Virus record (IMG/VR): IMGVR_UViG_3300050343_000191 | Span: 124,001 to 188,000 of that record | DNA length: 64,000 bases | Direction: 5' to 3' (one strand) | Shown here: positions 16,601 to 39,805 of the stretch, one piece after another | Layout of the letters: each line of letters opens with the position of its first letter | Position numbering within the stretch: the first letter of the stretch is position 1 | Program-made: the position numbers and the translations under genes | Notes under the pieces: model-generated | Told to the model about the DNA's origin: nothing | What the model saw: only the letters and a program-made list of their open reading frames with translations | The model's database searches: none

Positions 16601-19600
16601 TACACTCGTGACTCCTACTGCACTATCATTATCAATTTCATAGTTATTTCCTGCATTATTTTCAGTGGTGGGAGTTTGGAATACGCCATTAATAAACAGA
16701 ATACCATTACCAGCATCGATACCAGTAGTATTAGCACCGCCAACTTTCAATGTATATGTCTTACCAATTCCTGTGAAGGAATCTGAAATATCATCAAATA
16801 CCATATTGGTGTCATAATCAGATCTTAGGAAAGTTCTTCCAGAGAATTGTGCAGTTACATATGGGAGATTACTTTCATTTCTTCTTGCTCTATTATTACC
16901 TTTTGGTGGATCAATGAAGTGAACTTCGTTTCCAACAATATTGAGAGCACCCCTGTAGATTTGAATAGTTGATCCATCAATGTGTGATGTTGCTGCAGAT
17001 CCAACAGCACCTCTCTGTACAGCGACTGTTGGGAATGTTGCAGCAACACCAGCAGCAATAAGACCGTTAATAGGACCAAGAATTTGACCACCAATATTTG
17101 TGCTAAGACCAACCTCAACAACCTTCATATACTCATCATCAACTCTCAAAAGGTCTCTTGGTTGGACGGAAGAAATGCCAGTAACATTAAATGTCGAAAT
17201 ACCTACAGAGATTCCTCCACTATTAAAATCAAGTTTATGATTAATTGGGGTAAATGTTATTGGTTGTTGTACAATACCATCAATAGCAATGACAGTTTTA
17301 CTCAACTTCTTAGTAAATTCTAGTTCATGAGCATTTCCGATTCCCGCATCAGTGAAGGTAACGGATATACCTGCAGTAGCGAACTGTGGCGTTGTCGATA
17401 ATTTAAATGTATCTGGAGTTAGGGCAATTGGATAAACTCTATCTGGTAGTTTATCTGTTACAATACCAAGATGGTTTACAGTTGCACCAATTCCCATCGG
17501 TTGTGTTCCAATGCCAATAAAGGTTGAAGTTGGTCTGTAAATTAATTCTTCTCCAGTATTAAAGAAATGATCTCTTAATGTGAATACACCTGTTGAATAA
17601 TTGATATTAACAGTATCTGTAGGATCAAATGTCTTCACATAAATTGGTTTACCTTCATGAGTCAATGTAAAGTTGGTTCTATTTGCTCTTAGACCATTAA
17701 GTCCATCAAATGCAGAGAGGAATACCAACTGATCAGTTGGACCGTATGAAAGTGAATTTGCTTGGTTATCAAAGTCCATCTCTCTGTAGAAGACTTCACT
17801 AAATGCTTGTGCCTCTACATTGTATCCCAAGTCTGGATAGAAATTGAGATAGAACTGATTACCACTGATCTCTCCACCAAATGTACCAAGACCAGTAACA
17901 TTATTAACTGGTGCAAATGGTCCAGGAGTGACAGTAACTTCACTAGTTCTTGAATTTGAAAGAATGTTGACTTGATGGATTGCTGATGTTGTTCCTGCAG
18001 AAACACGAACGACTGCTGCTGCAGCAGAAATGAATCTGCTATCAAAAGTTCCAACTCTTACTATATCAGTACCAAATCCAATAGTTGATTCTAATCTTGC
18101 ACTTCTTTCTGTTCCTGCAGGTTGATTGTTAAGAAGGAATCTATATGTTCCGATTCCAGTTGTGGTATTTCCAAATCCAACAATATGTGTTCTATAATCA
18201 AAAGCATCAACCTGATCAAAATTACGACCACGTACAGAAACAATACCTGAATTAGCATCATAAATTGCACTAACAAGTCCAACATTTGATGCACTATAAG
18301 ACTGTGTAGTATGATCAAAATAATACTCACTTACATAAGTATTAGTTCCATCAAAATCAATTGCAGCTTCAACATAGTTAGTTTCTCCACTAAATCTATT
18401 GGAAATCTCAATGTTTGCAAATAATCCATTGAAATCAGTACCATTGAATTCTGCAAGTGTTCCAATATTATTACCACCGGATACACTAGAGAGACCAACA
18501 AAAGAACTGACAAGATTTACAGAACCGATTGCTTGAGTACCAATACCAGAATTTCCGGGAGGAAGTGCTTGGAAAAGATAGGATTTTTTGAGTACTTTGA
18601 TATCATGATCAGTTTCAAAGGCATCTGTTGGAGTAAAGACAAGAGTCTTTCTTCCAAAACTATCAATATTTGCACTAAAGTCCCCAAGTTTAATATTTGT
18701 AAACGAATTATATTTTTCAAATATAAAAATATCATTGGTAGTTGATTGAACAACTAATTCGGATAACTGAACATCTTTACTGTCTGGATCAGCAATTTGT
18801 ATGACATATCTTACATGATTATCTACAAAATCGATCTCTTCAATTTCAACGAAAGTATCCTTAAATCCTCTACTAGAGAACTTATTACTAATATCATCAT
18901 GAATGAGAACCCTATTAGTTCTACACTCAATATAATCCGTCAACTTTCTATTCTGAATCTGTAGAGCGTTTGATTGCGTAAGACCAGTAACAGGACTTAC
19001 TCTTGGATCAACATCTACTGCATTATCGAAGTTGTTGATAATATCAACTCTTCTTTCACTAACAACATCAAGAATTACAATTGCCGTAGTTGTTCCACCA
19101 AGACCAATACCACTTCTACCAACAGAAGTTACACCAACATCAGCAAAGTTCTTAAGACCTGCTGGGTGAACAATACTGTTTACTGGGGTAGAAAGTTCAT
19201 CCCAAGTTATGGGACTCTTAATAGAGTATGAAAGATTCTGATAATAGTCATTGTTAGGAGTTACTTGATAATCTTCACTAATTTTGCCAACATCATCACT
19301 CCAACCAAGTTCCATTCTTGAGGAGTAATCAACTACAAATTTTGCCCTCTTTCTATCAATATTAGTTACTTCTGCAATTACACCACTAATAATCCCTTTA
19401 ATAATATCACCTTTATTAAGATTATATTTTCCAGTATATTTGATGTAATCATCTCTCACTAGAGAAATAAATGCATCTTCAGAACGGAATCCATTGCCAT
19501 CACTATTAACAAATAGTCTTTCATTCTTAGTGAATGTTCCCCTTTTTTGTTTGATATCAATGCGTGGATAGATGTTCTCATTGATAAGAGTTGCATATCC

Positions 19601-22600
19601 TGATTGATATGTCTTAGCAATACCTGCGTTGGTTGTAAGTCCAACACCCGATGCATCAATTAATTGAAAAGTCAACGTTGCTGGACTGGTATTTGCAAAC
19701 TGTATTACTTTGAATAATTGATAGTCATAGTCACTAGAATTGAATCCAGATCCATCTGGAGAGGACATTTCAATGCCTTCAACAAATACTTTATCATCAA
19801 CAGAAAATGGTGCTTGATTATATCCAAGAATTGGTGTCTTAAGCACACAAGTTGCAATTCCAGTTGGTCCACTAACCATTGAAACGATACCCACACCATT
19901 TGAATTATTGATTGTAATAATCTTATGTGGTTCAGAATCTAATCCAAATATTGGTGCTAATTGAACAATTTCGGAAATAGATCCATTCGGCGCTTTTGCA
20001 ACAAGAGTTGTTGTATCAACAATACTCTTAGTCGTATCATTCCAGAGAATAACATCTGGATCAGCAAGATATTTTGCACCGGCAAACTGAATATCAATTT
20101 CTTGAATCGTATCTAAATTGTCAACAGTGACAATTGGTGGTACAAATGCTTCTGGTCTAAGAGTCTTATCTGAAGGATAGTCATATCCAATATCACGAAG
20201 TCTAGTCTTTTTGATTCTACCAATAGAAGTAGATATTCCAATAATATTAGCATTTCTACCATTTACAGATGTAACATCTTCAAATGATGGGAGTTTATCA
20301 AAATTAAATCCTTCTGAAATAACTCTTACTTTAGAAATACTTCCATTAAGTGCGTTTGAGGATTTAGTGCTATATTCTAAAGTATCACATTCAGCACTGA
20401 TGTACGATAATATATTTGGATATCTGAATGGAGAAATCTTGAACTCAGTTGTTGAAGATGTTGTTGAAATTCCAAATACAGAGTACGTTCCGTTATATTC
20501 ACTATTTTCATATCTAATTTCTGAATATGCTTTGACTTCAGTATCCGCAGTGCTGATGTATCCACCTTTTTCTAAACCATAGTAAAGTCTTGATGGAATA
20601 TTATTAGAGTAATTCAGAGTCAATGAAGAATCAGAGTCAGTGCCAAAACCAACACTACCAAGACCAACTACGTTGAAGTCTCTAGAATCTCCTGAACTGA
20701 TATATTCATTATTGAAATTCTTGTCTCTGTAAATCTTTAATTGATATCCTCTTAGTGAAGTATCCTGAAGATTAAACTTCAAGTCACTATTTCTTATAAC
20801 ATCAATTGGTGGATTGACAGCAGAAATATAATGATTAACTCCACCAGTTGCACTAATACTTACTCCATTCTCTGTTTTTGGATTAGATTCATATAAAGTC
20901 TCTGCAAGTCTGAATTTATCAATACTATCTTGAATTATATAATAAATGCCAGTTGTTATACCAGAAGCAACTTCTGCTGCTTCATAAAATACTTTATCAC
21001 CAGTTTTATATCCATGATCTTGATAGGTAAACGATCCGTCAGAGAGAGTAATACCCGTCGAATTGATACCAATTGTATTGACAAGAATTTTCTTCTCATC
21101 TAAATTCAATTTTATATTCAATGCTCCAGTTGTTCCAAAACCAACAACAGTATTTGGAACTACATTTAGTTTGATAACGTCTTTATTGAGTAGACCATGA
21201 GTTGACGAAGTACTAACAATGGTTGTAATTCTGTCAACATTTCCAAGAATTTGTCCTTTATTAGTTTCTAAAAGATATTCTGAATTATTAGATCCATCAC
21301 TATAGAAGAACAATCCTTCAGATGCAGTGGTTAAACCAACTTGTGTTGTTAATCCAATGAGATTTTCGCCTTTGTTTATAACAAATACATCACTTGATAA
21401 TGTATTTGTATCTGGAATAAAGAATGTTCCTTGGTTAAGGGAGTTATCCCCCACAATAAGAGAATCAACGCCAGCAAGAGTACTCTTAGTAAAAGTAATT
21501 CTTTCTCCTGTCCTTAATCCATGATTGGGTATATAAATTGCTCTACAGGGAACAGAAACGCTAGATGTAGTGACTCCAACTGTTCTTACTTTCTTTTGAG
21601 CTCCACCTGCAGTAGTTCCAACACCAACGGATGTTACTGCATTAAAATAAATTAGTTTATTTCTTTCAGAATTAAACTTTGTGGTTTTTACTGGAAGTTT
21701 GACTCTATCAGAACTCAAACTAAGATCACTTCCAAAGGAGTGTGCTACACCAGTAGATCCAAATCTCTTAACAGTAAGTACGCCGTTTGAATAGTCATTG
21801 AGAACTCTTACAGTCTCAGTACCATCAGAGGATGTAATTGTTATAGAATTGCCAATTGATACTTCTCTAAATCTTCTAGAAACAAAAATATCCTCAAATT
21901 TACCGCCAGGAAGACCTGAGTAATTGGACATTGTTCCAGCAAGACCAACGGACTCTGTAGTAAATCCTATTCTCTTAGGTCCACTAAGGAATGGTATAGA
22001 GGTCGAAAGACCACTCACAAGAACGGTATCGTTATTATTTAAATCATATCCATCGCGATTGTAAGCAGAAACTTGATTATCATTGTCCCAAACAAATACA
22101 CAGTTTACATTTCTTTCCAATTCAGTTCTAATAGAAGATATACCAGCACCCTTTAATTCTTGAACTTCTCCCCTAAGACCAGCACCGCCTGTACCTTCAA
22201 AATTAAAGTTAACTCTATCGCCAATAGAGTAACCAACTCCACCATCAATGACTCTAATTTCATCAACAGATCCCTTTGTAACTGACTCTACATTACAGCG
22301 TTGTTGGAAAGTTTCATAAGATTCGTTGATAAAGTCATAATCTGCATATGGATCACTGACTTTATATGGAAAGGTATTTCTAACAAGATTATTTCCATTG
22401 AAATCAAATGTCTGATCTAAAATTAGATTTTCACCTATTACTTGTGACTTAAATTCATTTCCAACAAAATATGGGTATGCTGGTGCAAATTTCGCAGAGT
22501 TTTGCCCACTGGTTGTAACTCCAACAAAGTATGCATAAACTCCATTTGGAAACTCTGGAGTTTTACAGAATCTACCATTATGCAAATCAAGATCACCACT

Positions 22601-25600
22601 ATTATTGTATAAGTAATCTTCTTTGAAGAATCCTGGTTCAAAAGTAGGTGGTCTATCAACAATAGAATTAGTGCTTAATTCATATCCAGTTTCAAGTCTA
22701 GCAACACCTGACTGAACATTATCTGCCGTTTGATATCCAAAGGGACCATAAATTGGATTTCCGTCATATGCCCATCCAATAATGGGTGAGTGAGATCCAT
22801 TTAAAGATTCAAAGTTCGATGCAAGATCTTGGGAGTATCCATATATTCCATAAACCAAAGAATCCTGCTTCTCATCCTTGTAAAGACTAGAATAAATTTC
22901 TGGACTTCTTGTTGCGGAAATTTTTCCAAATCTAAACGCATCGTTTATTGTTAAATCTCTAATTCTAGTATCAAAAATTGCACCAGATCCTCTAGAATCT
23001 ACAAATATTGAAGTAGAAGATGTGCTATACCCAATACCCGGATTAATGACAATAACATCATCAATCTTTCCATTTAAAAGTACGGGTCTGAGAATTGCAC
23101 CTACTCCACCAGAAGGATCTTCAATTTTAAGTTCTGGGATTGACTTATATTCAGATCCTTTGTTTAATACTTGAACATCAACAATTCTTCCATTAGAAAT
23201 AATTGGTGCAAGTTGAGAATTTTTACCTTTACTTATTGAAATTCTTGGTTTTGTATGTAAATTGAATACAGTAGATCCATATCCAGTTCCAGATTCATAC
23301 AAATAGGCATCAGTAATCTCACCAGTTACGATTGGTGTAAAGGTAAAGGTTCCAATACCAGATGCTCCAAAAGAAACATTAGCATTAACTTTAATCTCTG
23401 GATATTGGAAAATATGGTAACCACTTCCAATAGAATCAAATTTATTAAACTTTGATTTTTTGAGATCATCGGTAAATGTTCCAGCAATACCAACATTTAC
23501 AAGTCTAAATTGATCTGAATCTACAAATTGAATAGAATAACTATTTGAAGTAGAAAGACCAACAATGGGATTGCCTGTTGATTTATATGTAACTATTTCT
23601 CCATCCTTAAATCCATGATTATTAAAGTATACTGAATTATACTCTGTAGAAATACCACTAGATTTTACGCTTAATTTTCTGTAAGCATAACCAGATCCAC
23701 TATTGAGAACAGTAATAGATCTTACATTTTTTTGCGATAGAGTTCTAAATTTATGAATACCAGATGCTGATGTAGCAGCTGAAAGACCAATAGTATTGAT
23801 ACCAGTACTTATAGTGGTAATACCTGATGCAGAAGGTGCAAATGCATCATTATCATTTTTAAATAATCTAATAGTGGAAGTATTTACAATTCTAATTACA
23901 TATTCATCACCACTACTCAAACCTCCTGTTGAGATATTATTTGGATCGTATGCTTGTCCAATCTCAATAGGATTATTACCATTTTGATTGTAGATAATAT
24001 GCTCACCATCTGCAAGATTATGTGCCTTTGTAAATGTAATGGTTTCATTACTAGGATCAATTCCGCCACCAACATCTAGTCTACGACTGTCAAAAGATAT
24101 CTCTCTAAATCTTGTTCCAATAACTGGTTCCAAGGAACAACCAGATCCATTACCACCTATCAAATCTAGAGATAGGAATTCATCAAATCCAAATTCTTGA
24201 GGGTCAACAATAACTTGTTTAACATTACCAATAACAACTGGTTCAACCTTTGCACCAGTTCCAAGAGGAAGACCAGATCCAACCTCTGCAACATCTTCAA
24301 TATTTAATTCTGGTGGATTTATAACATCATATCCTTTACCACCATTAAGAACTTCAAATTCCTCTACAGGTCCATAATAAATTTTATCCCTGGAATCAGG
24401 ACTTACAATCTCTACACCATCAATCAATACTCCAACATTACTTACAGTCCTATCAACACTTTTACTACCTTGTAGTTGCTGTGATAATGGGAACTTTCTA
24501 AGAATTTTTTTACTTGAAAGAGTTCTATTTTCATGTCTCTTTAAAGTAAAATTATGTGCTCCAGCACCAAAGTTTGGATTAAATCTAGCAATATCATCAA
24601 AGTTTGCAATAGTTTTGGCGTTATTGGCAAGTTGAGACTTTGAAGCGTATAGTTTAATTTCGTTTGCAGCAACGAGTTTTACAAAATAACTTTCTCCAGA
24701 TGAAAGTCCAATTAAAGGACTTTCTGCGGTGTAGACTATTTCATCACCATCTCTAAAATCGACTGGTGTTGAAAATACAATTGTTCCATAAGTCTTATAA
24801 TAAGAATTGTAACCACCCAATCCTTGAGTATTGTTTGAGCCTACTGTTTTAATATATCCATCTGGAAGTATAGACTCAATAATATCATCTTTAATAGTAT
24901 ATCCTGGAAGAGAATTTGATGCCAAATACCCAAAGATTGCGAAATCGTCTACGTAAATATTGGATGTATTTGCAAGATATACTTCATTACCTACAGTAAG
25001 AACTACTCCAGAACTCTTTGCCTTTACAATCTTTCGTCTAATACTGTAATCTTTATTAGGATCTGGTGTAAAAGTACCAATATTGGATAGAGTAACTTCT
25101 TTGGTTAATGTGTTTATTGAAGACACTGTTGCAAATGATGCATTAGCAACATTTGGATCAGGTACAACTACTTGTTGACTATCGCCAATGAGAACCTCAA
25201 CAGAATCTCCTAGTTTAAGAAATGCCTTATCAATATCAGAAAATAGTGTGAATACAGAAGAATTTACTTCCTCCACTTTAAATCTTGGACTGGTATTATA
25301 AATCCAAGAATTAGCAAACATTTGCTTATAAGTCCTATCAACGACAGGATTCTCAATAACCTCACCAACATTTCTTGTAGTTATTTCCTCATCTTCTTCC
25401 ATCAGAGGAATATCTACCAAAGGTTTTAATTCTGATAGAACTCCAGTGATTCTCATATCACATCTATTTTCAATATCACCATCCTCATAACCAAAAATGG
25501 TTTCATCTGCTCTTACAACATCAGAGATATTAATTTTTGACGTGACACCAGTACAACCATAAAACTGATTAATACTCTTTGAAGTATAATCAATTCTATT

Positions 25601-26644
25601 ATTTCCAGAAATAATGGTCCCTGTTTGACCAAATCCAATTGTAGAGTCAACACTAATAACTGACGCATTTACTTCAACTGGTTCTAATGATCTAGATGCT
25701 CCAGGAATAGTAAAAATACCCTCTACAAGGTCTCTATCATTATATCCAACAAATACCCCAAGTTTATAAAAAGTTTGAGTGTCTCTTGTAAAAATCTCAA
25801 CATCAGAAACTGATGCATTTGTATCAAGATCATTTGACTTAAATACTGTCTGACCTTCTAATCCAAAAGGATTACCCGAAATATTTTCCGCTACGATAAC
25901 TTCTCTTCTGATATATTCGGCAGAAGATGGTTTAATTAGTCTACCTTCAAGATCTAATACTTCAGCATGAACACCATAAAGAACTTTGAAAAGAATTCTA
26001 ATAGATTCTGCAATACCCTTTGATTGATAAAAGTTTCTTGCATGCTTGATAAAGTTTCCAACATCTAAATCAGAAACAAAATCATACTCTTCCAGACCCG
26101 GAGTAAAGGTTTTTTTTAATTTTTTATAAAATTCTTGTAAGAAAACAACACTTAAGTTCTTTACTACTGATCCATTGGCCGCGGCGGATGCAGAAGTTTC
26201 ACTAAAAACAATATTCTGACTGTTTACATTGCTGAGAATATTAGAAATTCCTATATCATATCCAGAGATTCCACTGAATCCGCGAACACAACTATTGAAA
26301 GAAGTAGTAGTCTTTGATTTATAGGTGATAATTTCATCACCAATTTGTAAAAGACCATACTCGTCAGGAAATCCTTTTGTGGAAGTTACCTGAATAGTAT
26401 CTTGAGAAGATGTAATATCTCCTGTAAGCGATGTCTCACCTACAACAACCTCTGGAACGAGATTATCTACTCTGATATATCGATCAAGATTATCGACAAG
26501 ATCTACACTACCGCCCTGATGTTCTAAAGACAAATAGTATTGTCTAAAAAATTCTATGGCGTTTGGAAAATCAGCAACTAAAAACTCTGGAAGTTGGCTC
26601 TCAATAATTTTATTGAGTTGCACTCTCTTCTCAAATTGCGACAT
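13697..26644 (-). CDS. gp7: Baseplate wedge initiator gp7-like giant protein (4315 aa)
   Basis: N-terminus IIESQLPEFL...FFRQYY; FYQSKGIAESIRILFKVLYG; YYQNLSYSIKS...VHPAGLKNF; sits between gp6 and gp8. Confidence 0.85.
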   Translation of the reverse strand: MSQFEKRVQLNKIIESQLPEFLVADFPNAIEFFRQYYLSLEHQGGSVDLVDNLDRYIRVDNLVPEVVVGETSLTGDITSSQDTIQVTSTKGFPDEYGLLQIGDEIITYKSKTTTSFNSCVRGFSGISGYDIGISNILSNVNSQNIVFSETSASAAANGSVVKNLSVVFLQEFYKKLKKTFTPGLEEYDFVSDLDVGNFIKHARNFYQSKGIAESIRILFKVLYGVHAEVLDLEGRLIKPSSAEYIRREVIVAENISGNPFGLEGQTVFKSNDLDTNASVSDVEIFTRDTQTFYKLGVFVGYNDRDLVEGIFTIPGASRSLEPVEVNASVISVDSTIGFGQTGTIISGNNRIDYTSKSINQFYGCTGVTSKINISDVVRADETIFGYEDGDIENRCDMRITGVLSELKPLVDIPLMEEDEEITTRNVGEVIENPVVDRTYKQMFANSWIYNTSPRFKVEEVNSSVFTLFSDIDKAFLKLGDSVEVLIGDSQQVVVPDPNVANASFATVSSINTLTKEVTLSNIGTFTPDPNKDYSIRRKIVKAKSSGVVLTVGNEVYLANTSNIYVDDFAIFGYLASNSLPGYTIKDDIIESILPDGYIKTVGSNNTQGLGGYNSYYKTYGTIVFSTPVDFRDGDEIVYTAESPLIGLSSGESYFVKLVAANEIKLYASKSQLANNAKTIANFDDIARFNPNFGAGAHNFTLKRHENRTLSSKKILRKFPLSQQLQGSKSVDRTVSNVGVLIDGVEIVSPDSRDKIYYGPVEEFEVLNGGKGYDVINPPELNIEDVAEVGSGLPLGTGAKVEPVVIGNVKQVIVDPQEFGFDEFLSLDLIGGNGSGCSLEPVIGTRFREISFDSRRLDVGGGIDPSNETITFTKAHNLADGEHIIYNQNGNNPIEIGQAYDPNNISTGGLSSGDEYVIRIVNTSTIRLFKNDNDAFAPSASGITTISTGINTIGLSAATSASGIHKFRTLSQKNVRSITVLNSGSGYAYRKLSVKSSGISTEYNSVYFNNHGFKDGEIVTYKSTGNPIVGLSTSNSYSIQFVDSDQFRLVNVGIAGTFTDDLKKSKFNKFDSIGSGYHIFQYPEIKVNANVSFGASGIGTFTFTPIVTGEITDAYLYESGTGYGSTVFNLHTKPRISISKGKNSQLAPIISNGRIVDVQVLNKGSEYKSIPELKIEDPSGGVGAILRPVLLNGKIDDVIVINPGIGYSTSSTSIFVDSRGSGAIFDTRIRDLTINDAFRFGKISATRSPEIYSSLYKDEKQDSLVYGIYGYSQDLASNFESLNGSHSPIIGWAYDGNPIYGPFGYQTADNVQSGVARLETGYELSTNSIVDRPPTFEPGFFKEDYLYNNSGDLDLHNGRFCKTPEFPNGVYAYFVGVTTSGQNSAKFAPAYPYFVGNEFKSQVIGENLILDQTFDFNGNNLVRNTFPYKVSDPYADYDFINESYETFQQRCNVESVTKGSVDEIRVIDGGVGYSIGDRVNFNFEGTGGAGLRGEVQELKGAGISSIRTELERNVNCVFVWDNDNQVSAYNRDGYDLNNNDTVLVSGLSTSIPFLSGPKRIGFTTESVGLAGTMSNYSGLPGGKFEDIFVSRRFREVSIGNSITITSSDGTETVRVLNDYSNGVLTVKRFGSTGVAHSFGSDLSLSSDRVKLPVKTTKFNSERNKLIYFNAVTSVGVGTTAGGAQKKVRTVGVTTSSVSVPCRAIYIPNHGLRTGERITFTKSTLAGVDSLIVGDNSLNQGTFFIPDTNTLSSDVFVINKGENLIGLTTQVGLTTASEGLFFYSDGSNNSEYLLETNKGQILGNVDRITTIVSTSSTHGLLNKDVIKLNVVPNTVVGFGTTGALNIKLNLDEKKILVNTIGINSTGITLSDGSFTYQDHGYKTGDKVFYEAAEVASGITTGIYYIIQDSIDKFRLAETLYESNPKTENGVSISATGGVNHYISAVNPPIDVIRNSDLKFNLQDTSLRGYQLKIYRDKNFNNEYISSGDSRDFNVVGLGSVGFGTDSDSSLTLNYSNNIPSRLYYGLEKGGYISTADTEVKAYSEIRYENSEYNGTYSVFGISTTSSTTEFKISPFRYPNILSYISAECDTLEYSTKSSNALNGSISKVRVISEGFNFDKLPSFEDVTSVNGRNANIIGISTSIGRIKKTRLRDIGYDYPSDKTLRPEAFVPPIVTVDNLDTIQEIDIQFAGAKYLADPDVILWNDTTKSIVDTTTLVAKAPNGSISEIVQLAPIFGLDSEPHKIITINNSNGVGIVSMVSGPTGIATCVLKTPILGYNQAPFSVDDKVFVEGIEMSSPDGSGFNSSDYDYQLFKVIQFANTSPATLTFQLIDASGVGLTTNAGIAKTYQSGYATLINENIYPRIDIKQKRGTFTKNERLFVNSDGNGFRSEDAFISLVRDDYIKYTGKYNLNKGDIIKGIISGVIAEVTNIDRKRAKFVVDYSSRMELGWSDDVGKISEDYQVTPNNDYYQNLSYSIKSPITWDELSTPVNSIVHPAGLKNFADVGVTSVGRSGIGLGGTTTAIVILDVVSERRVDIINNFDNAVDVDPRVSPVTGLTQSNALQIQNRKLTDYIECRTNRVLIHDDISNKFSSRGFKDTFVEIEEIDFVDNHVRYVIQIADPDSKDVQLSELVVQSTTNDIFIFEKYNSFTNIKLGDFSANIDSFGRKTLVFTPTDAFETDHDIKVLKKSYLFQALPPGNSGIGTQAIGSVNLVSSFVGLSSVSGGNNIGTLAEFNGTDFNGLFANIEISNRFSGETNYVEAAIDFDGTNTYVSEYYFDHTTQSYSASNVGLVSAIYDANSGIVSVRGRNFDQVDAFDYRTHIVGFGNTTTGIGTYRFLLNNQPAGTERSARLESTIGFGTDIVRVGTFDSRFISAAAAVVRVSAGTTSAIHQVNILSNSRTSEVTVTPGPFAPVNNVTGLGTFGGEISGNQFYLNFYPDLGYNVEAQAFSEVFYREMDFDNQANSLSYGPTDQLVFLSAFDGLNGLRANRTNFTLTHEGKPIYVKTFDPTDTVNINYSTGVFTLRDHFFNTGEELIYRPTSTFIGIGTQPMGIGATVNHLGIVTDKLPDRVYPIALTPDTFKLSTTPQFATAGISVTFTDAGIGNAHELEFTKKLSKTVIAIDGIVQQPITFTPINHKLDFNSGGISVGISTFNVTGISSVQPRDLLRVDDEYMKVVEVGLSTNIGGQILGPINGLIAAGVAATFPTVAVQRGAVGSAATSHIDGSTIQIYRGALNIVGNEVHFIDPPKGNNRARRNESNLPYVTAQFSGRTFLRSDYDTNMVFDDISDSFTGIGKTYTLKVGGANTTGIDAGNGILFINGVFQTPTTENNAGNNYEIDNDSAVGVTSVIYTGITSVDGSFIQSDFDINQNQLPRGGLIVSLGSTPGLGYAPLLGAEIKVLKNSTGQLTDLIGINTVGSTVAISTALYNNITGILEIETNDSHNILGGDFVKLDNLEFSCGSTGYGTTTIFPDYDYPVDVVQVISATRVSIRVGPSTIPHTYETGGTVRRYFTNNFGSGYREPVSIGITDLAYEHKFIRSVNNSVTASSGGPFTPTKADYTSHTGVLRLTIPSHGLDTTDTVQIATDGLIFTCSDDDFFTEQPYPRATDPAAGATLGITSFTTNTISVGVGSAGGSGTGAVVDATVGIGGTLAFSITNPGQGYINPALIIPEPNYENVEVVGVSRLGIGATTETGRNLLLNLTVGAAGTSNVGIGSTLFLIDTFKVARSGYAFKPGDILEAVGLVTAKNYTQPIAPFQLEVVETFTDRFSSWSFGEMDYIDSIFGYQNGTRKRFPLYYNGELLSFELDPNNPLSANIDLDSVLVIFINGVLQTPGYAYQFTGGTSFLFMEAPKVNDKVDIFFYIGQDGVDVLQVETTETLKIGDDVRMLRQPLISTSQRQINDRAITEIVGSDIVETNIYSGPGVDDTNFRPFDWIKQKKDIYVKGDIVSKVRPVLETKIFPTAKIIGDVTPTSSDIFVDNAQFFDYDEIILDLNQNTFTFDAFMMETSNEPVSAAFTSTVSIAGTVSAVTIDNVGFGYTTSTIDIKFSAPKEIGVGIGITATGTANISNGQVSSVTVINPGFGYTNTNPPRIIAELPTPLYETINTVQNVQGFSGIITGISTTTGTGGHPLALKFNFRAMKDYGENGEANVASDALDLVAGYPIMIYDTTVGNGVTSVNSSDSAVVGIGTSFLDNVYVVNSITSLASNAEIICNIDSGSPVIGILESGTFDDLQAGLTTSLGKLSWGRIYNYDNRTNGISIGVTGLTVDAGLSTFPTIQRRGNFGEGKTGAIRSRKPRADGVSLEADNNLSFYIQ

Positions 26645-26647
26645 ATT

Positions 26648-28552
26648 TTATTTCCTCTCTAGATCTCCGTTGGAATAACTTGAAGTATAATAGTCTCTTG
26701 TGAAAGACACGCCAGAAATATCTTCACCAGATGCAATAACATCTTTAACCATATTTATTGTACTACTTGAAACGCTAAAACTGAGGTAAAGATCTTTTAA
26801 ACCAACCACATCATTGGATTCTGGGAAAGCTTGAATCTCAACAATATTATTTGGTTTTTCAGTTTCAACAATATTGATAGTATTAAGAATAACCTCCCCC
26901 TTTATGTAATCAACTACACCTGCTTCTTTGGCAACAACAGTTTTTATTCCATTAGCGCCAATCTTAACTATGGAAACAACTCCACTCTTAAGGTCTGCAT
27001 TTGGTAAATCTGTGATATACACCGTTGAAGTATCACCAACAATTTTAAATCCTGTAGATTTAATATTCAGTCCATTTGGTTTTACATTAAATCTATTACC
27101 AAAGCAAATTTCGTATTGAGCAAACTGATTAACCAATACTTTCATATCTCTTCTAATTTTCACCTTAGTGATGTTAGAAGTAATGGCAGTATCAACGCGA
27201 TCAATTAGTTGAAGAACCTTACTATACTTAAATCTTCCACCAAAACGATTCATATCAACATCTTTAGAGTATTTTGTAAGACTATCAATAATATTAGTCC
27301 TTAAACCATCAACAGTAGCAACCTGTGAGGAGTTATAATAGATATTAGATTCAATTTCAACATAAAGAACCTTAAGATCAATAATTTTTTGATTAATACC
27401 TGCAATTGAGTACTGCTTAATCTTATTCAGAATATTTCTCTTATCAAAATCAGAGACATATGTGCCATTCTTGGGTTTTATGCTGATTTGAACGGTACCA
27501 AACTGTGGTGGTACTAATTCTTCACCACCAACAACTGCAACAGACTCTGTATTTGGGTAAATCGAAGCAATAATTGCCTCATAATCTCTTGATGTAACCG
27601 CTCTATATTGCGCTGAGTACAGTCTTGGGGCGAAATACTTAATAGAAGACACATCTTCAATTCCGCCACCGTTCATCGCCTTCTGGATGGTTGTAACGGG
27701 TACTGATCCACTAGGAATTACCCTCTTACCTTCCTGATCTTGGAGATTTGCTTGAAATTCAAAGACGGAAGGTCCATTTCCTGCTTCACCATCAGTAACA
27801 ATGTAACTTACAGAGATAAGTTTGCCATTTTCCAACTTTTTACCAAAATATCCATCACCAAACAGTAATTCATACCTCTCATCTTGAACTTCCTGGAGCA
27901 AATAGATCTCTGAGTTCTTATCAATGTTTAAAATATTGTCAACTCTACTAAAATCTCTACCAGTGCCTGCTTCACCAACATTAGAAACGTTTACTCTAAT
28001 GGTTGAAGCATCAATATTTGGATTATCAAGGATAAAACGCTGATCTATAGATGTATCAGTGACAAATTGACGTGTAAGAAGAGTTCCTTGAAAAAGTTCT
28101 ATTGGTTTTTGTTCTGTTCCGAACTGTGCTACACCATTAACCACTGCTGCAGTGACTTTTTCGGGTAGTGAAAAGCGATATGAACTATTATCTTGCCCTC
28201 CAACACACACCAGACCTGCTTCAACGGTGATAAAACCGCTACTGGTAGTGGTAGGGACTGAAAAGGTTACGTTTGCCTTAGCGGCGCTTGCAGAGCGAGG
28301 CACGTAACCAATGTTTCGTGCTAGTGATACGACATTTTCGCGTACTGTTGCACCATCTAGGAATGATTCATTGACTACAAGGTTAGCATTGAACGCATTA
28401 ATGTACGTATTATATGCTAAGGTGTCAATTAATATCGAAAAATTAGATCCCTCAAAGTCAAAATCCGTAAAATTTGAATTAGAACGGAGATATGCTTTGA
28501 TTTCTGATTTAATTTGATCGAAATCTAAGTTAGTAAACTGAGTAAAAGGCAT
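26648..28552 (-). CDS. gp6: Baseplate wedge subunit gp6
   Basis: LDFDQIKSEIKAYL...FTDFDFEGSNFSILIDTLAYNTY; RAVTSRDYEAII. Confidence 0.95.
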   Translation of the reverse strand: MPFTQFTNLDFDQIKSEIKAYLRSNSNFTDFDFEGSNFSILIDTLAYNTYINAFNANLVVNESFLDGATVRENVVSLARNIGYVPRSASAAKANVTFSVPTTTSSGFITVEAGLVCVGGQDNSSYRFSLPEKVTAAVVNGVAQFGTEQKPIELFQGTLLTRQFVTDTSIDQRFILDNPNIDASTIRVNVSNVGEAGTGRDFSRVDNILNIDKNSEIYLLQEVQDERYELLFGDGYFGKKLENGKLISVSYIVTDGEAGNGPSVFEFQANLQDQEGKRVIPSGSVPVTTIQKAMNGGGIEDVSSIKYFAPRLYSAQYRAVTSRDYEAIIASIYPNTESVAVVGGEELVPPQFGTVQISIKPKNGTYVSDFDKRNILNKIKQYSIAGINQKIIDLKVLYVEIESNIYYNSSQVATVDGLRTNIIDSLTKYSKDVDMNRFGGRFKYSKVLQLIDRVDTAITSNITKVKIRRDMKVLVNQFAQYEICFGNRFNVKPNGLNIKSTGFKIVGDTSTVYITDLPNADLKSGVVSIVKIGANGIKTVVAKEAGVVDYIKGEVILNTINIVETEKPNNIVEIQAFPESNDVVGLKDLYLSFSVSSSTINMVKDVIASGEDISGVSFTRDYYTSSYSNGDLERK

Positions 28553-29641: not shown

Positions 29642-30403
29642 TCAGATTACGCGAGTCTTTTCGTGACCAACTCTGACGCGAGGATCACACCAAATCTCAA
29701 ATCCTGCTTCCTTTGCGTCCAGACAGAATGATACATCCTCTCCACACATATCCTGTACTTCACCAGATTCAAAGACTTGCATCTTCGGGGCAAACCAAGG
29801 ATACTTAATCTCTTCGTGCTCAAAGACTCCATTCTTGATCAGCAACCATCCAAATCCTGCATAGTCTACAGTGAATGGTTTCTTACGCTTAGCAATACTC
29901 TCAAGTGTTTCGTGATTCATAACACCACCATTATTACGGAAGTCATCTTCTTCCATCCAATGTGCAACTGAGGTGGTCTGACCGTCTTCGGTACAATACC
30001 AACCACTTGCAATATCTTGGTCCATCAATACTAACTGATAGAACTTCTCAGTGTTAAACACAATATCACTATCAATCCATAACTGATAATCATACTGTAA
30101 CTTACCATCCCAAGGTTTCTGATCAGGTCCACGAAGAACATTAGCACCTAAACACTTGCAACGGGCGAAGTTCACCATTGAACTATAATCTTGGGAGATC
30201 TGAATCGATGCTCCGTTCTGTACTAGATCAAAACATAATTGTACAAAATTCTTCAGATACGTGTATGATACACCGCGACCTGGTAAACAGAATACAATGG
30301 TCTTTCCTTTAACCATCTCTCTTGCCTTTGTAAAATCCCATTCTGTCTCTACGGGTTTTTTTACAACGGGCGATTTTGCTTTTACTGTAAATCCTTTTGC
30401 CAT
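29642..30403 (-). CDS. GT-A fold glycosyltransferase-like protein
   Basis: IVFCLPG; FARCKC; YDYQLWIDSDIVF (DxD); GFGWLLIKNGVFE; GEDVSFC; D..V..GH. Confidence 0.75.
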   Translation of the reverse strand: MAKGFTVKAKSPVVKKPVETEWDFTKAREMVKGKTIVFCLPGRGVSYTYLKNFVQLCFDLVQNGASIQISQDYSSMVNFARCKCLGANVLRGPDQKPWDGKLQYDYQLWIDSDIVFNTEKFYQLVLMDQDIASGWYCTEDGQTTSVAHWMEEDDFRNNGGVMNHETLESIAKRKKPFTVDYAGFGWLLIKNGVFEHEEIKYPWFAPKMQVFESGEVQDMCGEDVSFCLDAKEAGFEIWCDPRVRVGHEKTRVI

Positions 30404-30441: not shown

Positions 30442-30470
30442 ATTATACTCCATTATAAGGAGCACGTCAA
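30442..30470 (-). promoter_or_regulatory. Sigma70-type promoter TTGACG-N17-TATAAT
   Basis: -35 at 30465-30470, -10 at 30442-30447, 17-nt spacer; upstream of the glycosyltransferase-like gene. Confidence 0.8.
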
Positions 30471-30661
30471 TCTTTTAGTTCGGTTATCAGTATAGAATCT
30501 CCATCAACCTCCAAATTTAACTGTGTACCTTCATACCACCCAAATTCAGAGATAATCCACTCCGGTACTTGAACGACATATTCACCTGTTACGGGATCGA
30601 CCTCTACAGTCGAAAAATTTTTGCCGGGATTTTTTTGCATAAGAGGTATTTCGTTTTCCAT
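30467..30661 (-). CDS. AbrB/MazE/SpoVT-type DNA-binding domain protein
   Basis: YVVQVPEWIISEFGWYEGTQLNLEVDGDSILI matches the swapped-hairpin pattern xPxxIxxxxGWxxGxxL. Confidence 0.65.
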   Translation of the reverse strand: MENEIPLMQKNPGKNFSTVEVDPVTGEYVVQVPEWIISEFGWYEGTQLNLEVDGDSILITELKD

Positions 30662-31703: not shown

Positions 31704-31887
31704 GGTTGGTTGTTTCAACTGAGATAACAATAGGGCATCTGGTGCGTTGTGCCTATTTCATGTGCCACCTGTCAAACTGGCACACAATCCAAATTCAACC
31801 CCCCTAGCGTGCTAGGATGAAGGTAGACTCTAAAATTGGTTGAGTTAGTATTAATTAAAGGGGAGAATCATCCCCCCCTAAGTGTTA

Positions 31888-32370
31888 TCAGAAGTTGGTG
31901 CAGAAAATATATCCGTCCTGCTCAATGTAGTCGTGGCGGAGATTATCCCATGTGTCTTCCCAATCAACAGAAACAAAGGAAGGAATATCGAGTGAGTAAC
32001 AATCAGAAACTAACTGTTCTGCAAACTCAGCGCCTGACATTTCGCCCTGATAAGAGTCAGAAATGTCAGAGATACAATCCTCTCCAAAGTATTCAATAAA
32101 AGCACGGATTGCATCAGCAGGATAATCCTCTAATGCTTCATTGATTGCCTCTTGATTATCACTATCCTCTGCCTCAATCGTTTCTTCTTCGATGTCATCA
32201 ACTGTTTCGCCCTTTACCTCTAACAATGCCATGTAAAAATCGGTAAAGTGAACTTTAGTATTTGAACCTTCGACGGTACAATAACCACAAGCGATGGCGA
32301 TCTCTGTAGGTTTCTTGCCTTCCGCTTGCATTGCGGCGACGGTTTCTTTGAGAGCGGTTCCAGTGAGCAT
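31888..32370 (-). CDS. Fusion of a cyanobacterial AbrB N-terminal domain with an ArdA-like acidic domain
   Basis: Residues 1-54 LTG.AL..V...E.A.ACGY...V.FTDFY.ALL..KG match the cyAbrB (Sll0359-type) N-domain. The C-terminal DSYQGE...EFAEQLV...DIPSFVSVDWE...DY...GYIF matches the ArdA C-terminal domain. Confidence 0.65.
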   Translation of the reverse strand: MLTGTALKETVAAMQAEGKKPTEIAIACGYCTVEGSNTKVHFTDFYMALLEVKGETVDDIEEETIEAEDSDNQEAINEALEDYPADAIRAFIEYFGEDCISDISDSYQGEMSGAEFAEQLVSDCYSLDIPSFVSVDWEDTWDNLRHDYIEQDGYIFCTNF

Positions 32371-32457
32371 GGTTCTGTGTGAGAGTGCGGGGTGGTCCCG
32401 CTTGTGTTTATTGTAGACCCTAGGGGGGAGTTTGTGAACCCCCCCAGTGGACGCTTA

Positions 32458-32664
32458 TCAGACCGCCACAGTCTGAAGGGTTTCGTTGCGGATCTGCTGA
32501 TTCATGAACTTACCTTTGGATTCAGCAGTATTGAACCCCAGAGCGAAACGCTGAACGTCTGCCACTGTGTAAGTGTAAGCACGCCCGCCGTTAAATGTAA
32601 CGGTCACGCGGTCGCCGTCAAGAGCGACTGAATCAAGAGCGGATGAGTTGAAAGCGTTGATCAT
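32458..32664 (-). CDS. KTSC-domain protein (start MINAFNSSAL)
   Basis: SSALDSV...VTFNGGRAYTY...AESKGKFMNQQIR. Confidence 0.65.
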   Translation of the reverse strand: MINAFNSSALDSVALDGDRVTVTFNGGRAYTYTVADVQRFALGFNTAESKGKFMNQQIRNETLQTVAV

Positions 32665-32739
32665 GATTTTGTAGAGTTTGTTTTGTGGAGTCTTTAGGGC
32701 GCTGCCGTTCCCGTGTTTCAATTATAAGGGATGAACGGA

Positions 32740-33611: not shown

Positions 33612-33845
33612 TCATGCGTAATGCTTATATGCAAGCGCATCATAATCTTGTGTGTCGCGTGTGTATTCTTCATCCAGATCTTCATCTAGATGTGTATGTG
33701 CATACGATTGCACACACATCTCATAAGACTCGTCGAGATCGTATTCATATGCTGGTGCATAGGTATAGTCGAGATCGTAATCGTCGTACATAATTCTCGT
33801 CGAGATTGCCATGTTTATTATACCGATAACTCGTCTAGATGTCAA
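33612..33845 (-). CDS. Asp/Tyr-rich hypothetical protein (start uncertain)
   Basis: YDDYDLDYTYAPAYEYDLDE; overlaps the palindrome array; TATAAATA at 33886-33893 upstream. Confidence 0.55.
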   Translation of the reverse strand: MTSRRVIGIINMAISTRIMYDDYDLDYTYAPAYEYDLDESYEMCVQSYAHTHLDEDLDEEYTRDTQDYDALAYKHYA

Positions 33846-38738: not shown

Positions 38739-39302
38739 TCATACAGGCAATACTGCCTCACTCCGTGTCTTCTGTGCCAGTTTGCTCTTTGGCACATTCA
38801 ACTCCTCCATTATAATTTGTTTTGGTAGAAAGTCCCAGCAATAGTATGAACTACTAAACGTGATCTTATCATTCGATCTACCATCAGGACTATGAAACTT
38901 CATTCGCTTGTCAAACATCAACAATTGCAGATCCTTGTCCTTGAACAACTGCTTTGGTGCAGAATCATTCAACCAAGTGTTAGTCATAATCAACGCAAAT
39001 GGTTTGTTGAATGACAATGCCCGCTCAAAGAACTTACGCTTGTTTGTAAATGGAGGATTTGATACAATTACATCAAAGTGAACAGGTTCATAGGCAAAGA
39101 AGTCTTTACCCTCATCAATATGAGAGTATTCAACACTATGAGTCTGTGAAATTTGCTTAACAAATTCACTCTCTGCCTTATCAAATGGACACCATACTTT
39201 TGCATCCGTTGGAATATACTTCAGGATGGGAGTAACAGCGTAATCTGGCGTATAGCACTCATCATTGTTACCTGATGAGTACATAAGTTCTTTAGAGTCC
39301 AT
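38739..39302 (-). CDS. Amino (N6-adenine type) DNA methyltransferase
   Basis: DECYTP (motif X), VWCPFD (I), DFF and VSNPPF (IV); likely start MDSKELMYS. Confidence 0.8.
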   Translation of the reverse strand: MDSKELMYSSGNNDECYTPDYAVTPILKYIPTDAKVWCPFDKAESEFVKQISQTHSVEYSHIDEGKDFFAYEPVHFDVIVSNPPFTNKRKFFERALSFNKPFALIMTNTWLNDSAPKQLFKDKDLQLLMFDKRMKFHSPDGRSNDKITFSSSYYCWDFLPKQIIMEELNVPKSKLAQKTRSEAVLPV

Positions 39303-39304
39303 AA

Positions 39305-39805
39305 TTATCCTAGAATACAAGTACCAACGGCATAAATCTCCTTCTTAGATATTGTAACACCAATACGGGGATCTTTGGCATTACCTGATTTCTTTTTAGG
39401 ATATTGTTTCTTTGCTTTTGGAATCAAAATACACAATACATCATCACAATTAAGTTTCCATACTTCTGCAATCTTAGCACCTTCATATCGTGCATAATAG
39501 TGATTCTTATACTTACCAATCTTATCTTCTACTAAGTATCGTTCTTGCTCTTCCCAAGTGTCTTGAACACTGATACCATTATACGTTGCATTGATAGAAT
39601 TTGCAATAGTTGATTTATACTCAGCGCCACCATCTTGATCGAAAGCATCAGCACCACTGTAATCATCAGCGATACGATGCCCTAGAATCCCTGCCATATA
39701 AATTTCACGCGAACGTGCATAACTGAAAGGATCTCCCCACCCTTGTTTTTCACAAAGGCAGTACATATCCTCGTAAAGTGAGCGATACTGTTCTTCAGGT
39801 GTCAT
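39305..39805 (-). CDS. PvuII-like PD-(D/E)XK restriction endonuclease (putative)
   Basis: GADAFDQDGGAEYKS parallels PvuII GNDAVDNAGQEYELKS; IGKYK..YYARYEG..IAEVWKL parallels [25 protein letters not shown]; similar length; adjacent to the MTase. Confidence 0.65.
   Translation of the reverse strand: MTPEEQYRSLYEDMYCLCEKQGWGDPFSYARSREIYMAGILGHRIADDYSGADAFDQDGGAEYKSTIANSINATYNGISVQDTWEEQERYLVEDKIGKYKNHYYARYEGAKIAEVWKLNCDDVLCILIPKAKKQYPKKKSGNAKDPRIGVTISKKEIYAVGTCILG

What the first reader, a model, noticed from the sequence alone, without database searches (positions are those of the whole stretch)
31888..32370. Chimera of a host-type cyAbrB N-domain and an ArdA-like DNA mimic
The first about 54 aa match the N-terminal domain of cyanobacterial AbrB regulators (LTG..L..V...ACGY...V..TDFY.A.L..KG). 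The host protein's DNA-binding domain is replaced by an Asp/Glu-rich linker and a domain matching the C-terminal part of ArdA, a DNA-mimic inhibitor of type I restriction enzymes. The gene has its own dyad promoter. Hypothesis 1: it co-assembles with host cyAbrB and poisons this global carbon/nitrogen and nucleoid regulator. Hypothesis 2: it uses the N-domain to oligomerise an elongated DNA mimic against host R-M or other DNA-sensing defences. I know of no description of this fusion.
Basis: partly seen in the sequence, partly recalled or inferred. Interest (0 to 1): 0.85.

Follow-up and report, generated by a model that had tools for sequence, protein, structure and literature searches.

The report
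Cyanophage ArdA mimic with cyAbrB-type head
A cyanophage gene joins the N-terminal domain of the cyanobacterial regulator cyAbrB to a shortened ArdA-type DNA mimic; the fusion is real, conserved and common in ocean phages, is probably an anti-restriction decoy, and gives a way to test what the cyAbrB N-domain does.

Summary
Window 31888-32370 (minus strand) is an intact 160-aa gene in a T4-like cyanomyovirus.

- **N-domain (residues 1-54):** homologous to the N-terminal region of genuine cyAbrB proteins (hhalign 99.3%, E 1e-20).
- **Linker (55-69):** disordered and acidic, net charge -9.
- **C-half (70-160):** net charge -21. It is a remote ArdA homologue covering most of domain 2 and all of domain 3, with the VF motif kept and domain 1 absent.

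Both halves are under purifying selection (dN/dS 0.05-0.22). The architecture recurs in more than 260 protein clusters. It also occurs in T7-like cyanopodoviruses, where the gene sits in the early region upstream of the RNA polymerase.

The N-domain is not a one-off host capture. It is a promiscuous module that also occurs:
- alone (P-TIM68 gp074);
- on full-length ArdA;
- on HNH nucleases;
- on unknown acidic and basic domains;
- in tandem repeats.

Best reading: an ArdA-type DNA-mimic decoy whose dispensable domain 1 is replaced by a neutral protein-association domain. Whether that domain self-associates or docks onto host cyAbrB is untested.

I rate this a new variant of a known kind, of moderate to high interest.

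The parts
31888..32370 (-). Complete CDS, 160 aa plus stop (stop codon at 31888-31890)
   Evidence: ORF list. More than 260 homologous clusters share the same two-domain layout. dN/dS is 0.05-0.22 in both halves.
32209..32370 (-). cyAbrB-N-type domain, residues 1-54 (helix 4-16, helix 21-27, beta-hairpin 31-40, helix 42-52); net charge -1
   Evidence: hhalign against cyAbrB: 99.3%, E 9.6e-21. hmmsearch: 541 hits. AF2 of the domain alone: pLDDT 92.9. Charge. No solved structural relative.
32164..32208 (-). Acidic flexible linker, residues 55-69; net charge -9
   Evidence: Composition. pLDDT below 50 for residues 55-61, and pTM 0.57 for the whole protein.
31891..32163 (-). ArdA-like DNA-mimic module, residues 70-160 (about ArdA domain 2 in part plus domain 3); net charge -21; I155-F156 corresponds to the VF motif
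   Evidence: PHROG 36653 E 6e-19. Pfam ArdA sub-threshold. hhalign against annotated ArdA: 92.7%, E 4.3e-7, residues 87-158. Foldseek BFVD probability 1.0. PDB top hit 2w82. Motif mapping through.
32410..32438 (-). Sigma-70-like promoter candidate, TTCACA-17-TACAAT (10 of 12)
   Evidence: Consensus scan. A -10-like box lies at the same distance from the ATG in related loci. Not statistically distinguished from chance.
32423..32445 (.). G6/C7 stem-loop between the upstream KTSC gene's stop and the promoter candidate; the only such hairpin in the window
   Evidence: Sequence. Regex count over the window.
32387..32401 (.). Second short GC stem-loop in the 5' leader; present only in the closest relatives
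   Evidence: Scan. In the upstream alignment it appears as an insertion shared with L004 and L005.
31861..31878 (-). Terminator-like hairpin followed by a T-rich tail, just after the stop codon
   Evidence: Scan.

Best explanation
**What it is.** The gene encodes a two-module cyanophage host-takeover protein.

**C-terminal module (shown by homology).** This is an ArdA-family DNA mimic reduced to the parts that matter in ArdA: most of domain 2 and all of domain 3.

**What that module does (inferred).**
- It presents a strongly acidic, DNA-like surface.
- It sequesters a host DNA-binding enzyme soon after infection.
- The default target is the methyltransferase core of a type I restriction-modification enzyme. 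A related DNA-tracking defence is also possible.

**N-terminal module (shown by homology).** ArdA's dispensable domain 1 is replaced by a cyAbrB-N-type domain. It is charge-neutral and independently folded, and it hangs on a flexible acidic tether.

**What that domain does (inferred).** It is a protein-association module. It most likely self-associates, giving the mimic a second dimerisation or oligomerisation contact that raises avidity. This would matter because the tyrosine at the core of the ArdA dimer interface is not conserved in this family.
For: **Homology of both halves.** N-half. C-half.

**Charge pattern.** N-domain -1, linker -9, C-half -21. Family-wide the ranges are -3..+1, -3..-9 and -18..-25.

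**Motif mapping.**
- The VF-motif equivalent I155-F156 is kept; F156 is invariant in the close family and nearly so across distant fusions.
- P130, D136 and W137 align with Tn916 P131, D139 and Y140.
- Tn916 Y137 aligns with a variable position.

**Published behaviour of ArdA.**
- ArdA domain 1 can be deleted, and domains 2+3 bind the MTase core (PMC2731889).
- Small C-terminal ArdAs alone relieve type I restriction (PMC12548430).

**Conservation and spread.**
- Both halves are under purifying selection.
- The architecture is conserved in more than 260 clusters and in 27+ clusters at the 50% level.
- In T7-like cyanopodoviruses the homologue lies in the early region upstream of the RNA polymerase. 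It is the fifth gene from the left end in S-CBP1. My own knowledge: T7 ocr occupies a comparable position.

**Target availability.** Type I R-M exists in some marine Synechococcus, for example WH5701 (PMC11726456).

**N-domain as an interaction module.** It occurs in tandem repeats and with many unrelated partner domains, as such modules do.
Against: **No functional assay.** Nothing was tested at the bench.

**Weak formal ArdA scores.**
- Pfam ArdA is below the gathering score.
- The Foldseek match to the ArdA crystal structure is weak (E=1, TM 0.41).

**Doubts about the target.**
- Some hosts of phages carrying ArdA-like genes have no recognisable defence system. Synechococcus WH8102 is one (PMC11726456), so type I R-M may not be the main target.
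- ArdA-like proteins are reported to act on other DNA-binding proteins as well (abstracts of PMC13091555 and PMC13300388).

**N-domain role unknown.**
- Nothing shows that the N-domain self-associates.
- Its fold has no solved relative, and its role in cyAbrB itself is unknown.
Confidence: 0.5

Rival explanations
1. **Decoy aimed at host cyAbrB.** The N-domain co-assembles with the N-domain of host cyAbrB1/2. cyAbrB2 is a nucleoid-associated protein that coats long low-GC tracts. The tethered DNA mimic then occupies the AbrB DNA-binding domain. This would strip or block cyAbrB on the AT-rich phage genome and derail host carbon/nitrogen regulation.
For: - The N-domain is homologous to that of cyAbrB and has the same neutral charge.
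- Phages also carry stand-alone N-domains (P-TIM68 gp074), which is the classic form of a dominant-negative subunit.
- cyAbrB2 binds long low-GC tracts and represses the genes in them; it is expected to oligomerise, and it interacts with cyAbrB1 (PMC11368403).
- The window is 37.6% GC, against 59.4% for Synechococcus WH8102.
- cyAbrB is present in every cyanobacterium, unlike type I R-M (PMC13249358).
- DNA-mimic ArdAs can affect transcription-factor-controlled expression (PMC13300388 abstract).
Against: - No interaction data exist, and it is not known that the cyAbrB N-domain mediates oligomerisation.
- The ArdA-fused N-domains cluster apart from cellular cyAbrB, with about 34% identity at profile level. 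Tracking of a host interface is therefore not evident.
- The same N-domain is fused to HNH nucleases, to a basic domain (phage B23 gp246) and to a 1050-aa cellular protein. This fits a generic module better than a cyAbrB-specific hook.
Confidence: 0.25
2. **DNA mimic against another host DNA-binding target.** The target could be BREX-like methyltransferases, repair nucleases or other nucleoid proteins. The N-domain would bind a different partner or a small ligand, neither self nor cyAbrB.
For: - An ArdA-like phage protein is reported to suppress deoxyinosine repair (PMC13091555 abstract), and Ocr inhibits BREX (PMC7261183 abstract); both.
- The conserved Cys28-Gly-Tyr motif lies in the region of cyAbrB that is subject to modification; glutathionylation and phosphorylation of cyAbrB2 are mentioned in PMC11368403.
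- The N-domain has many different partner domains.
Against: - No specific candidate target emerges from the locus. The neighbours are small genes of unknown function.
- The Cys is not conserved in distant fusions such as S-B28, S-CBP1 and P-TIM68 gp074.
Confidence: 0.2
3. **Artefact.** An assembly chimera or a decaying gene whose two halves are joined by chance.
For: Several database relatives are visibly frameshifted or truncated assemblies.
Against: - The intact two-domain ORF recurs in 53 viral contigs with conserved synteny.
- It occurs in isolated phages: S-B28, S-CBP1, WH11-B and 7B11-B.
- dN/dS is 0.05-0.22 in both halves.
Confidence: 0.02

Closest known systems
ArdA (Tn916 ORF18, PDB 2w82; plasmid ArdAs; PF07275)
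   Same: The C-half is homologous to the end of domain 2 and all of domain 3. It has the same extreme negative charge, a VF-motif equivalent, and the conserved Pro/Asp/aromatic residues of the antirestriction-motif region. ArdA domains 2+3 are the part that binds the type I methyltransferase core.
   Different: Domain 1 is absent and replaced by an unrelated neutral domain plus an acidic linker. The protein is below the Pfam gathering score. The dimer-core Tyr137 is not conserved. Activity is untested.
Short phage ArdA-like antirestriction proteins (P-TIM68 gp061, S-TIM5, S-TIM54, S-PM2; PHROG 36653) and bacterial sArdC
   Same: These are the closest sequence relatives of the C-half (53% identity to P-TIM68 gp061 over residues 79-160). 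They also lack ArdA domain 1. sArdC shows that such a fragment can relieve type I restriction by itself.
   Different: They have no cyAbrB-N-type domain. P-TIM68 carries that domain as a separate 52-aa gene 3.3 kb away.
cyAbrB1/cyAbrB2 (Sll0359/Sll0822 type cyanobacterial AbrB-like regulators)
   Same: Homologous N-terminal ~54-residue domain, with the same predicted helix-helix-hairpin-helix layout and the same Cys-Gly-Tyr and F-T-x-F-Y motifs.
   Different: There is no AbrB/SpoVT DNA-binding domain, so the protein cannot bind DNA the way cyAbrB does. It carries a DNA mimic instead.
N-domain + full-length ArdA proteins (P0236, P0243)
   Same: The same N-domain is joined to an ArdA-family mimic through a linker.
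   Different: They keep ArdA domain 1 and pass the Pfam threshold. They are 244-253 aa long. One comes from an NCBI genome assembly whose organism I could not identify, not from a phage contig.
T7 Ocr (gp0.3) and T4 Arn (my own knowledge)
   Same: These are functional analogues: acidic phage DNA mimics made early in infection. The podovirus homologues occupy an Ocr-like position upstream of the RNA polymerase. Arn is reported to bind the nucleoid protein H-NS, which is a precedent for a mimic aimed at a silencer.
   Different: No sequence similarity; Pfam returns no Ocr match. They have different folds and no added interaction domain.

Membership tests
ArdA (PF07275) | Scores above the Pfam gathering cut-off (27 bits) | tested here: not met
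   14.7 bits for the whole protein and 17.2 bits for the C-half. 10 of 24 diverse fusion members reach E<=0.01.
ArdA (PF07275) | Profile-level homology to annotated, structure-linked ArdAs | tested here: met
   hhalign of A1 against four plasmid ArdAs: 92.7%, E 4.3e-7, residues 87-158. Those ArdAs hit 2w82 at E 1.2e-14.
ArdA (PF07275) | Three-domain monomer (domains 1, 2, 3) | tested here: not met
   Only Pfam profile positions 57-154 are matched. The N-terminal 54 residues belong to a different family.
ArdA (PF07275) | Essential VF motif in domain 3 (Tn916 I160-F161) | tested here: met
   I155-F156 aligns with it through. F156 is invariant in the close family and nearly invariant across distant fusions.
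ArdA (PF07275) | Antirestriction motif / dimer interface (Tn916 126-140, with Y137-I138 at the core) | tested here: inconclusive
   P130, D136 and W137 align with P131, D139 and Y140. Y137 aligns with a variable position (Ser134), and there is a two-residue gap (hand mapping).
ArdA (PF07275) | Strongly acidic, DNA-like surface | tested here: met
   Net -21 over 91 residues plus -9 in the linker. The spatial pattern of the charges was not mapped.
ArdA (PF07275) | ArdA fold | tested here: inconclusive
   2w82 is the top PDB hit, but with E=1, probability 0.57 and TM 0.41 over 111 columns. Predicted phage antirestriction structures match at probability 1.0.
ArdA (PF07275) | Inhibits type I restriction-modification | not testable with these tools
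   Needs a plaque or in vitro binding assay.
cyAbrB regulators | Cyanobacteria-specific N-terminal domain | tested here: met
   hhalign 99.3%, E 9.6e-21. cyAbrB proteins match the N-domain profile at E 1e-9 to 1e-12 in a search of 1.84 billion proteins.
cyAbrB regulators | C-terminal AbrB/SpoVT DNA-binding domain (PF14250/PF04014) | tested here: not met
   No Pfam hit. The cyAbrB C-domain HMM finds nothing in the window. The protein is therefore not a cyAbrB.
Ocr (T7 gp0.3) | Sequence membership | tested here: not met
   No Ocr family appears among the Pfam or PHROG hits. The resemblance is only in function and gene position.

The most novel reading that the evidence does not exclude
The fusion is a tethered anti-silencer. 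Its N-domain docks onto the N-domain of host cyAbrB, an essential H-NS-like nucleoid protein that coats low-GC DNA. The attached DNA mimic then plugs the AbrB DNA-binding domain. This would free the AT-rich phage genome from silencing and collapse host carbon/nitrogen control. The stand-alone phage N-domains would be simpler dominant-negative versions of the same trick.
Probability: 0.2. Interest if true: 0.85.

Novelty: new variant of a known kind. Interest (0 to 1): 0.6.

Why it matters
cyAbrB proteins are present in every cyanobacterium, and cyAbrB1 is essential. The role of their N-terminal domain is nevertheless unknown.

This work shows that ocean cyanophages have taken up that domain as a portable module. 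They carry it alone, on ArdA mimics (short and full-length), on nucleases and on other domains. That gives a direct experimental handle on what the domain binds.

It also widens the known architecture of ArdA-family DNA mimics. Here the dispensable domain 1 is swapped for a protein-association domain.

If the partner turns out to be host cyAbrB, this would be the first phage counter-measure against the cyanobacterial nucleoid protein. If not, it is still an abundant, unannotated anti-defence family in marine cyanophages, currently labelled 'hypothetical protein' or mislabelled.

Tried and rejected
**Searches that found nothing useful**
- Pfam and NCBIfam on the N-half alone found nothing. The reason is that PF14250 starts at the last helix of the N-domain.
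- A word-indexed homologue search restricted to residues 1-58 returned only close family members and no cyAbrB. The exhaustive profile search was needed to reach them.
- PDB sequence searches with the family profiles (A1, A3) did not reach 2w82. The link had to go through annotated plasmid ArdAs.
- Foldseek of the isolated N-domain model against the PDB gave only noise (best E 2.7, TM below 0.4). The fold gives no clue to function.
It therefore says little about taxonomic spread.
- Contigs carrying the N-domain + full ArdA, N-domain + HNH and N-domain + unknown-domain proteins were too short to show context.

**Ideas tested and rejected**
- *The nearby 64-aa ORF (30467-30661) is the missing AbrB half of cyAbrB.* It has only a weak PF04014 match (E 0.027) and does not match the cyAbrB C-domain HMM.
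- *'D-Y-I' at residues 147-149 is the Tn916 Y137-I138 pair.* Explicit mapping places Y137-I138 opposite Ser134-Val135.
- *The related 40-90 kb contigs are podoviruses.* They share the baseplate synteny of the window, so they are fragments of the same myovirus type.

**Low-resolution result**
- The N-domain tree is too short to resolve origins. It shows only that the ArdA-fused copies cluster, with 3-4 label changes against about 21 in shuffles.

Full report
**1. What is there**

Window 31888-32370 on the minus strand is an uninterrupted 160-codon ORF. It has an ATG start and no earlier in-frame start codon.

The window itself is a T4-like cyanomyovirus:
- The 634-aa gene at 26648-28552 is a baseplate wedge subunit (phrog_219, E 2e-194).
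- The 253-aa gene at 29642-30403 is a conserved cyanomyovirus protein.
- The only DNA-level relatives are Synechococcus and Prochlorococcus phages.
- The protein is 100% identical to one on a 231-kb IMG/VR contig (L003).

The gene sits in a run of small same-strand genes upstream of the baseplate module. This layout is shared by the related viral contigs.

**2. The gene is real and the architecture is conserved**

- A homologue search returned 267 protein clusters, nearly all 150-200 aa with both halves.
- 53 viral contigs carry the gene.
- In an alignment of 26 members, invariant positions lie in both halves.
- Pairwise dN/dS among close relatives is 0.10-0.22 for codons 1-54 and 0.05-0.15 for codons 70-160.
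- Shorter database relatives are frameshifted or truncated assemblies, not alternative architectures.

**3. N-terminal half**

Pfam, NCBIfam and PHROGs do not recognise residues 1-60.

*Exhaustive profile search.* I built a 51-position profile of the domain from 25 viral loci (A2) and ran it against 1.84 billion representative proteins. It found 541 proteins at E<=1e-3 and 71 at E<=1e-10.

*The hits include genuine cyAbrB.*
- Many hits have the typical cyAbrB layout.
- Four that I tested pass PF14250 at E 1e-14 to 1e-23.
- hhalign of the phage family against 20 such proteins gives probability 99.3%, E 9.6e-21, over 62 columns.
- Two of the three confirmed genomic loci are cyAbrB genes of Vulcanococcus/Cyanobacteriota.

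*Correction on PF14250.* The Pfam model starts at about residue 43 of cyAbrB. It covers the last N-domain helix and the AbrB domain, not the N-domain.

*Structure.* AF2 predicts helix-helix-hairpin-helix with pLDDT 92.9 when the domain is folded alone. Foldseek finds no solved relative.

*Charge.* The domain is close to neutral, at -1 (family range -3 to +1). cyAbrB N-domains are similar, at -1 to +4.

**4. Linker and C-terminal half**

*Linker.* Residues 55-69 carry nine acidic and no basic residues. Residues 55-61 are predicted disordered, and a pTM of 0.57 implies no fixed orientation between the two domains.

*C-half.* Residues 70-160 carry net charge -21.

*Evidence for ArdA homology:*
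- PHROG 36653 'anti-restriction protein', E 6e-19.
- Pfam ArdA below threshold (E 0.05 whole protein, 0.008 C-half), matching profile positions 57-154 of 155.
- tblastn hits to annotated antirestriction genes of P-TIM68 (53% identity), S-TIM5, S-TIM54 and Streptomyces phages.
- hhalign against four annotated plasmid ArdAs: 92.7%, E 4.3e-7, for residues 87-158. Those four match the Tn916 ArdA structure 2w82 at E 1.2e-14.
- Foldseek of the full model finds phage antirestriction proteins in BFVD at probability 1.0. It ranks 2w82 first in the PDB, but only at E=1 and TM 0.41.

*Residue mapping.* Chaining by hand gives these correspondences:

| This protein | Tn916 ArdA |
|---|---|
| P130 | P131 |
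| D136-W137 | D139-Y140 |
| I155-F156 | VF motif I160-F161 |
| Ser134 (variable position) | Y137 (dimer core) |

*Conclusion.* The C-half is ArdA domain 2 (in part) plus domain 3, and domain 1 is missing. According to the ArdA structure paper, domain 1 is dispensable and domains 2+3 bind the methyltransferase core (PMC2731889). Small proteins matching only the C-terminal part of ArdA relieve type I restriction on their own (PMC12548430).

**5. The N-domain is a promiscuous module**

I sorted the best 150 representatives with local HMMs:

| Partner of the N-domain | Approximate count |
|---|---|
| AbrB domain (cyAbrB) | 31 |
| ArdA-like domain | 29 |
| None (N-domain with at most 25 further residues, or a truncated sequence) | 20 |
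| Other or unknown (many are frameshifted cyAbrB) | 70 |

Specific cases:
- **N-domain + complete ArdA:** P0236 and P0243, PF07275 E 5e-26 and 2.5e-23.
- **N-domain + HNH_2 nuclease:** P0152.
- **N-domain + an unknown acidic domain:** P0161 type.
- **N-domain + a basic domain:** Synechococcus phage B23 gp246.
- **Tandem repeats** of two to four N-domains.
- **An internal copy** in a 1050-aa Vulcanococcus protein.
- **A stand-alone copy:** the 52-aa P-TIM68 gp074, scoring 39 bits against the profile and TM 0.84 to the model. It lies 3.3 kb from that phage's separate ArdA-like gene gp061.

BFVD also holds a phage-encoded 'AbrB family transcriptional regulator' that matches the N-half.

A tree of the 55-column domain is poorly resolved. 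The ArdA-fused copies fall into about three clusters apart from cellular cyAbrB, needing 3-4 label changes against about 21 in shuffles. The fusion is therefore old and diversified, not a recent host capture.

**6. Position and expression**

Distant full-length homologues (about 28-31% identity) occur in the T7-like cyanopodoviruses S-B28, S-CBP1, WH11-B and 7B11-B.
- In S-CBP1 the homologue is the fifth gene from the left end, 2.6 kb upstream of the RNA polymerase.
- In S-B28 it lies between the packaging gene and the RNA polymerase.
- This is the early region. My own knowledge: T7 keeps ocr in a comparable position.

In the window, a 10/12 sigma-70-like site (32438..32410) precedes the gene.
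- Its -35 hexamer lies in the loop of the only G6/C7 hairpin in the window.
- A -10-like box recurs at the same distance from the ATG in relatives.
- The scan as a whole is not above the shuffled expectation.
- A terminator-like hairpin follows the stop codon.
- 'Own promoter' is therefore plausible but not shown.

**7. Mechanism**

*Shown:*
- The two homologies.
- The charge partition between the domains.
- The flexible tether.
- Purifying selection on both halves.
- Modular reuse of the N-domain.
- Early-region placement in podoviruses.

*Inferred:* The C-half acts as an ArdA-type DNA mimic that sequesters a host DNA-binding enzyme. Type I R-M is the default target, and such a system exists in Synechococcus WH5701 (PMC11726456). 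The neutral N-domain is a protein-association module. I favour self-association, which would reinforce a mimic whose canonical dimer-core tyrosine is not conserved.

*Main rival (0.25):* The N-domain docks on host cyAbrB and the mimic blocks its DNA-binding domain. In its favour:
- cyAbrB2 coats long low-GC tracts, is expected to oligomerise, and binds cyAbrB1 (PMC11368403).
- The phage DNA is 37.6% GC, against 59.4% for a typical host.
- Some hosts lack any known defence system, whereas cyAbrB is universal (PMC13249358).
- Phages also carry bare N-domains.

Against it:
- There are no interaction data.
- The phage and host N-domains are divergent.
- The domain has many unrelated partners.

**8. 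Comparison and novelty**

- The protein is not a cyAbrB, because it has no AbrB domain.
- It is an atypical, sub-threshold member of the ArdA superfamily that lacks domain 1.
- Its nearest relatives are the short cyanophage ArdA-like proteins and bacterial sArdC.
- The addition of the cyAbrB-type domain is undescribed in the literature I could search.
- It is also unannotated in databases.
- I rate it a new variant of a known kind, with interest 0.6.

Noticed in passing
window 13697-26644 (-): A single 4315-aa ORF lies immediately downstream of the baseplate wedge gene (26648-28552). It is presumably a giant structural or fibre protein.
   Followed up: no
window 30467-30661 (-): A 64-aa ORF has a weak MazE/AbrB-fold match (PF04014, E 0.027) and a PHROG 661 match (E 1e-12). 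It does not match the cyAbrB C-domain HMM, so it is not the 'missing half' of cyAbrB.
   Followed up: partly
window 32458-32721 (-): The gene directly upstream encodes an 87-aa KTSC-domain protein (PF13619, 25.3 bits against a cut-off of 25).
   Followed up: no
window 38739-39320 (-): A 193-aa ORF matches only positions 200-387 of a 458-position DNA methyltransferase PHROG (E 8e-39). It may be a truncated or split methyltransferase.
   Followed up: no
window 33817-33845 (-): A perfect sigma-70 consensus (TTGACA-17-TATAAT). The window's only other near-perfect site (11/12) is at 30442-30470.
   Followed up: no
L066:9512-9670 (Prochlorococcus phage P-TIM68 gp074): A stand-alone 52-aa cyAbrB-N-type domain, annotated as hypothetical. 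It lies 3.3 kb from the phage's separate ArdA-like gene gp061 (L066:5839-6252).
   Followed up: partly
L068:2471-2899 (Synechococcus phage B23 gp246): The N-domain is fused to an ~80-residue basic domain of unknown family. This is the opposite charge to the ArdA fusions.
   Followed up: no
L067:1127-1693 (Synechococcus phage S-CBP1 gene 0005): A 188-aa N-domain + ArdA-like protein, annotated as hypothetical. It is the fifth gene from the left genome end, upstream of an integrase and the RNA polymerase.
   Followed up: partly
L061:2539-5691 (Vulcanococcus MAG): A 1050-aa cellular protein has an internal N-domain (about residues 155-207), followed by acidic repeats.
   Followed up: no
P0152, P0163, P0199, P0265 (metagenomic proteins): An N-domain is followed by a conserved 'LRK-AQRKL-DGK-LT-ELxALP' segment. 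In P0152 an HNH_2 nuclease domain follows as well (PF13391, E 1e-10).
   Followed up: partly
L062:73-822 (Nostoc punctiforme plasmid pNPUN03 ArdA): This annotated ArdA has an ~75-residue N-terminal extension that is not the cyAbrB-N-type domain. Extensions in front of ArdA domain 1 therefore occur in other forms too.
   Followed up: no
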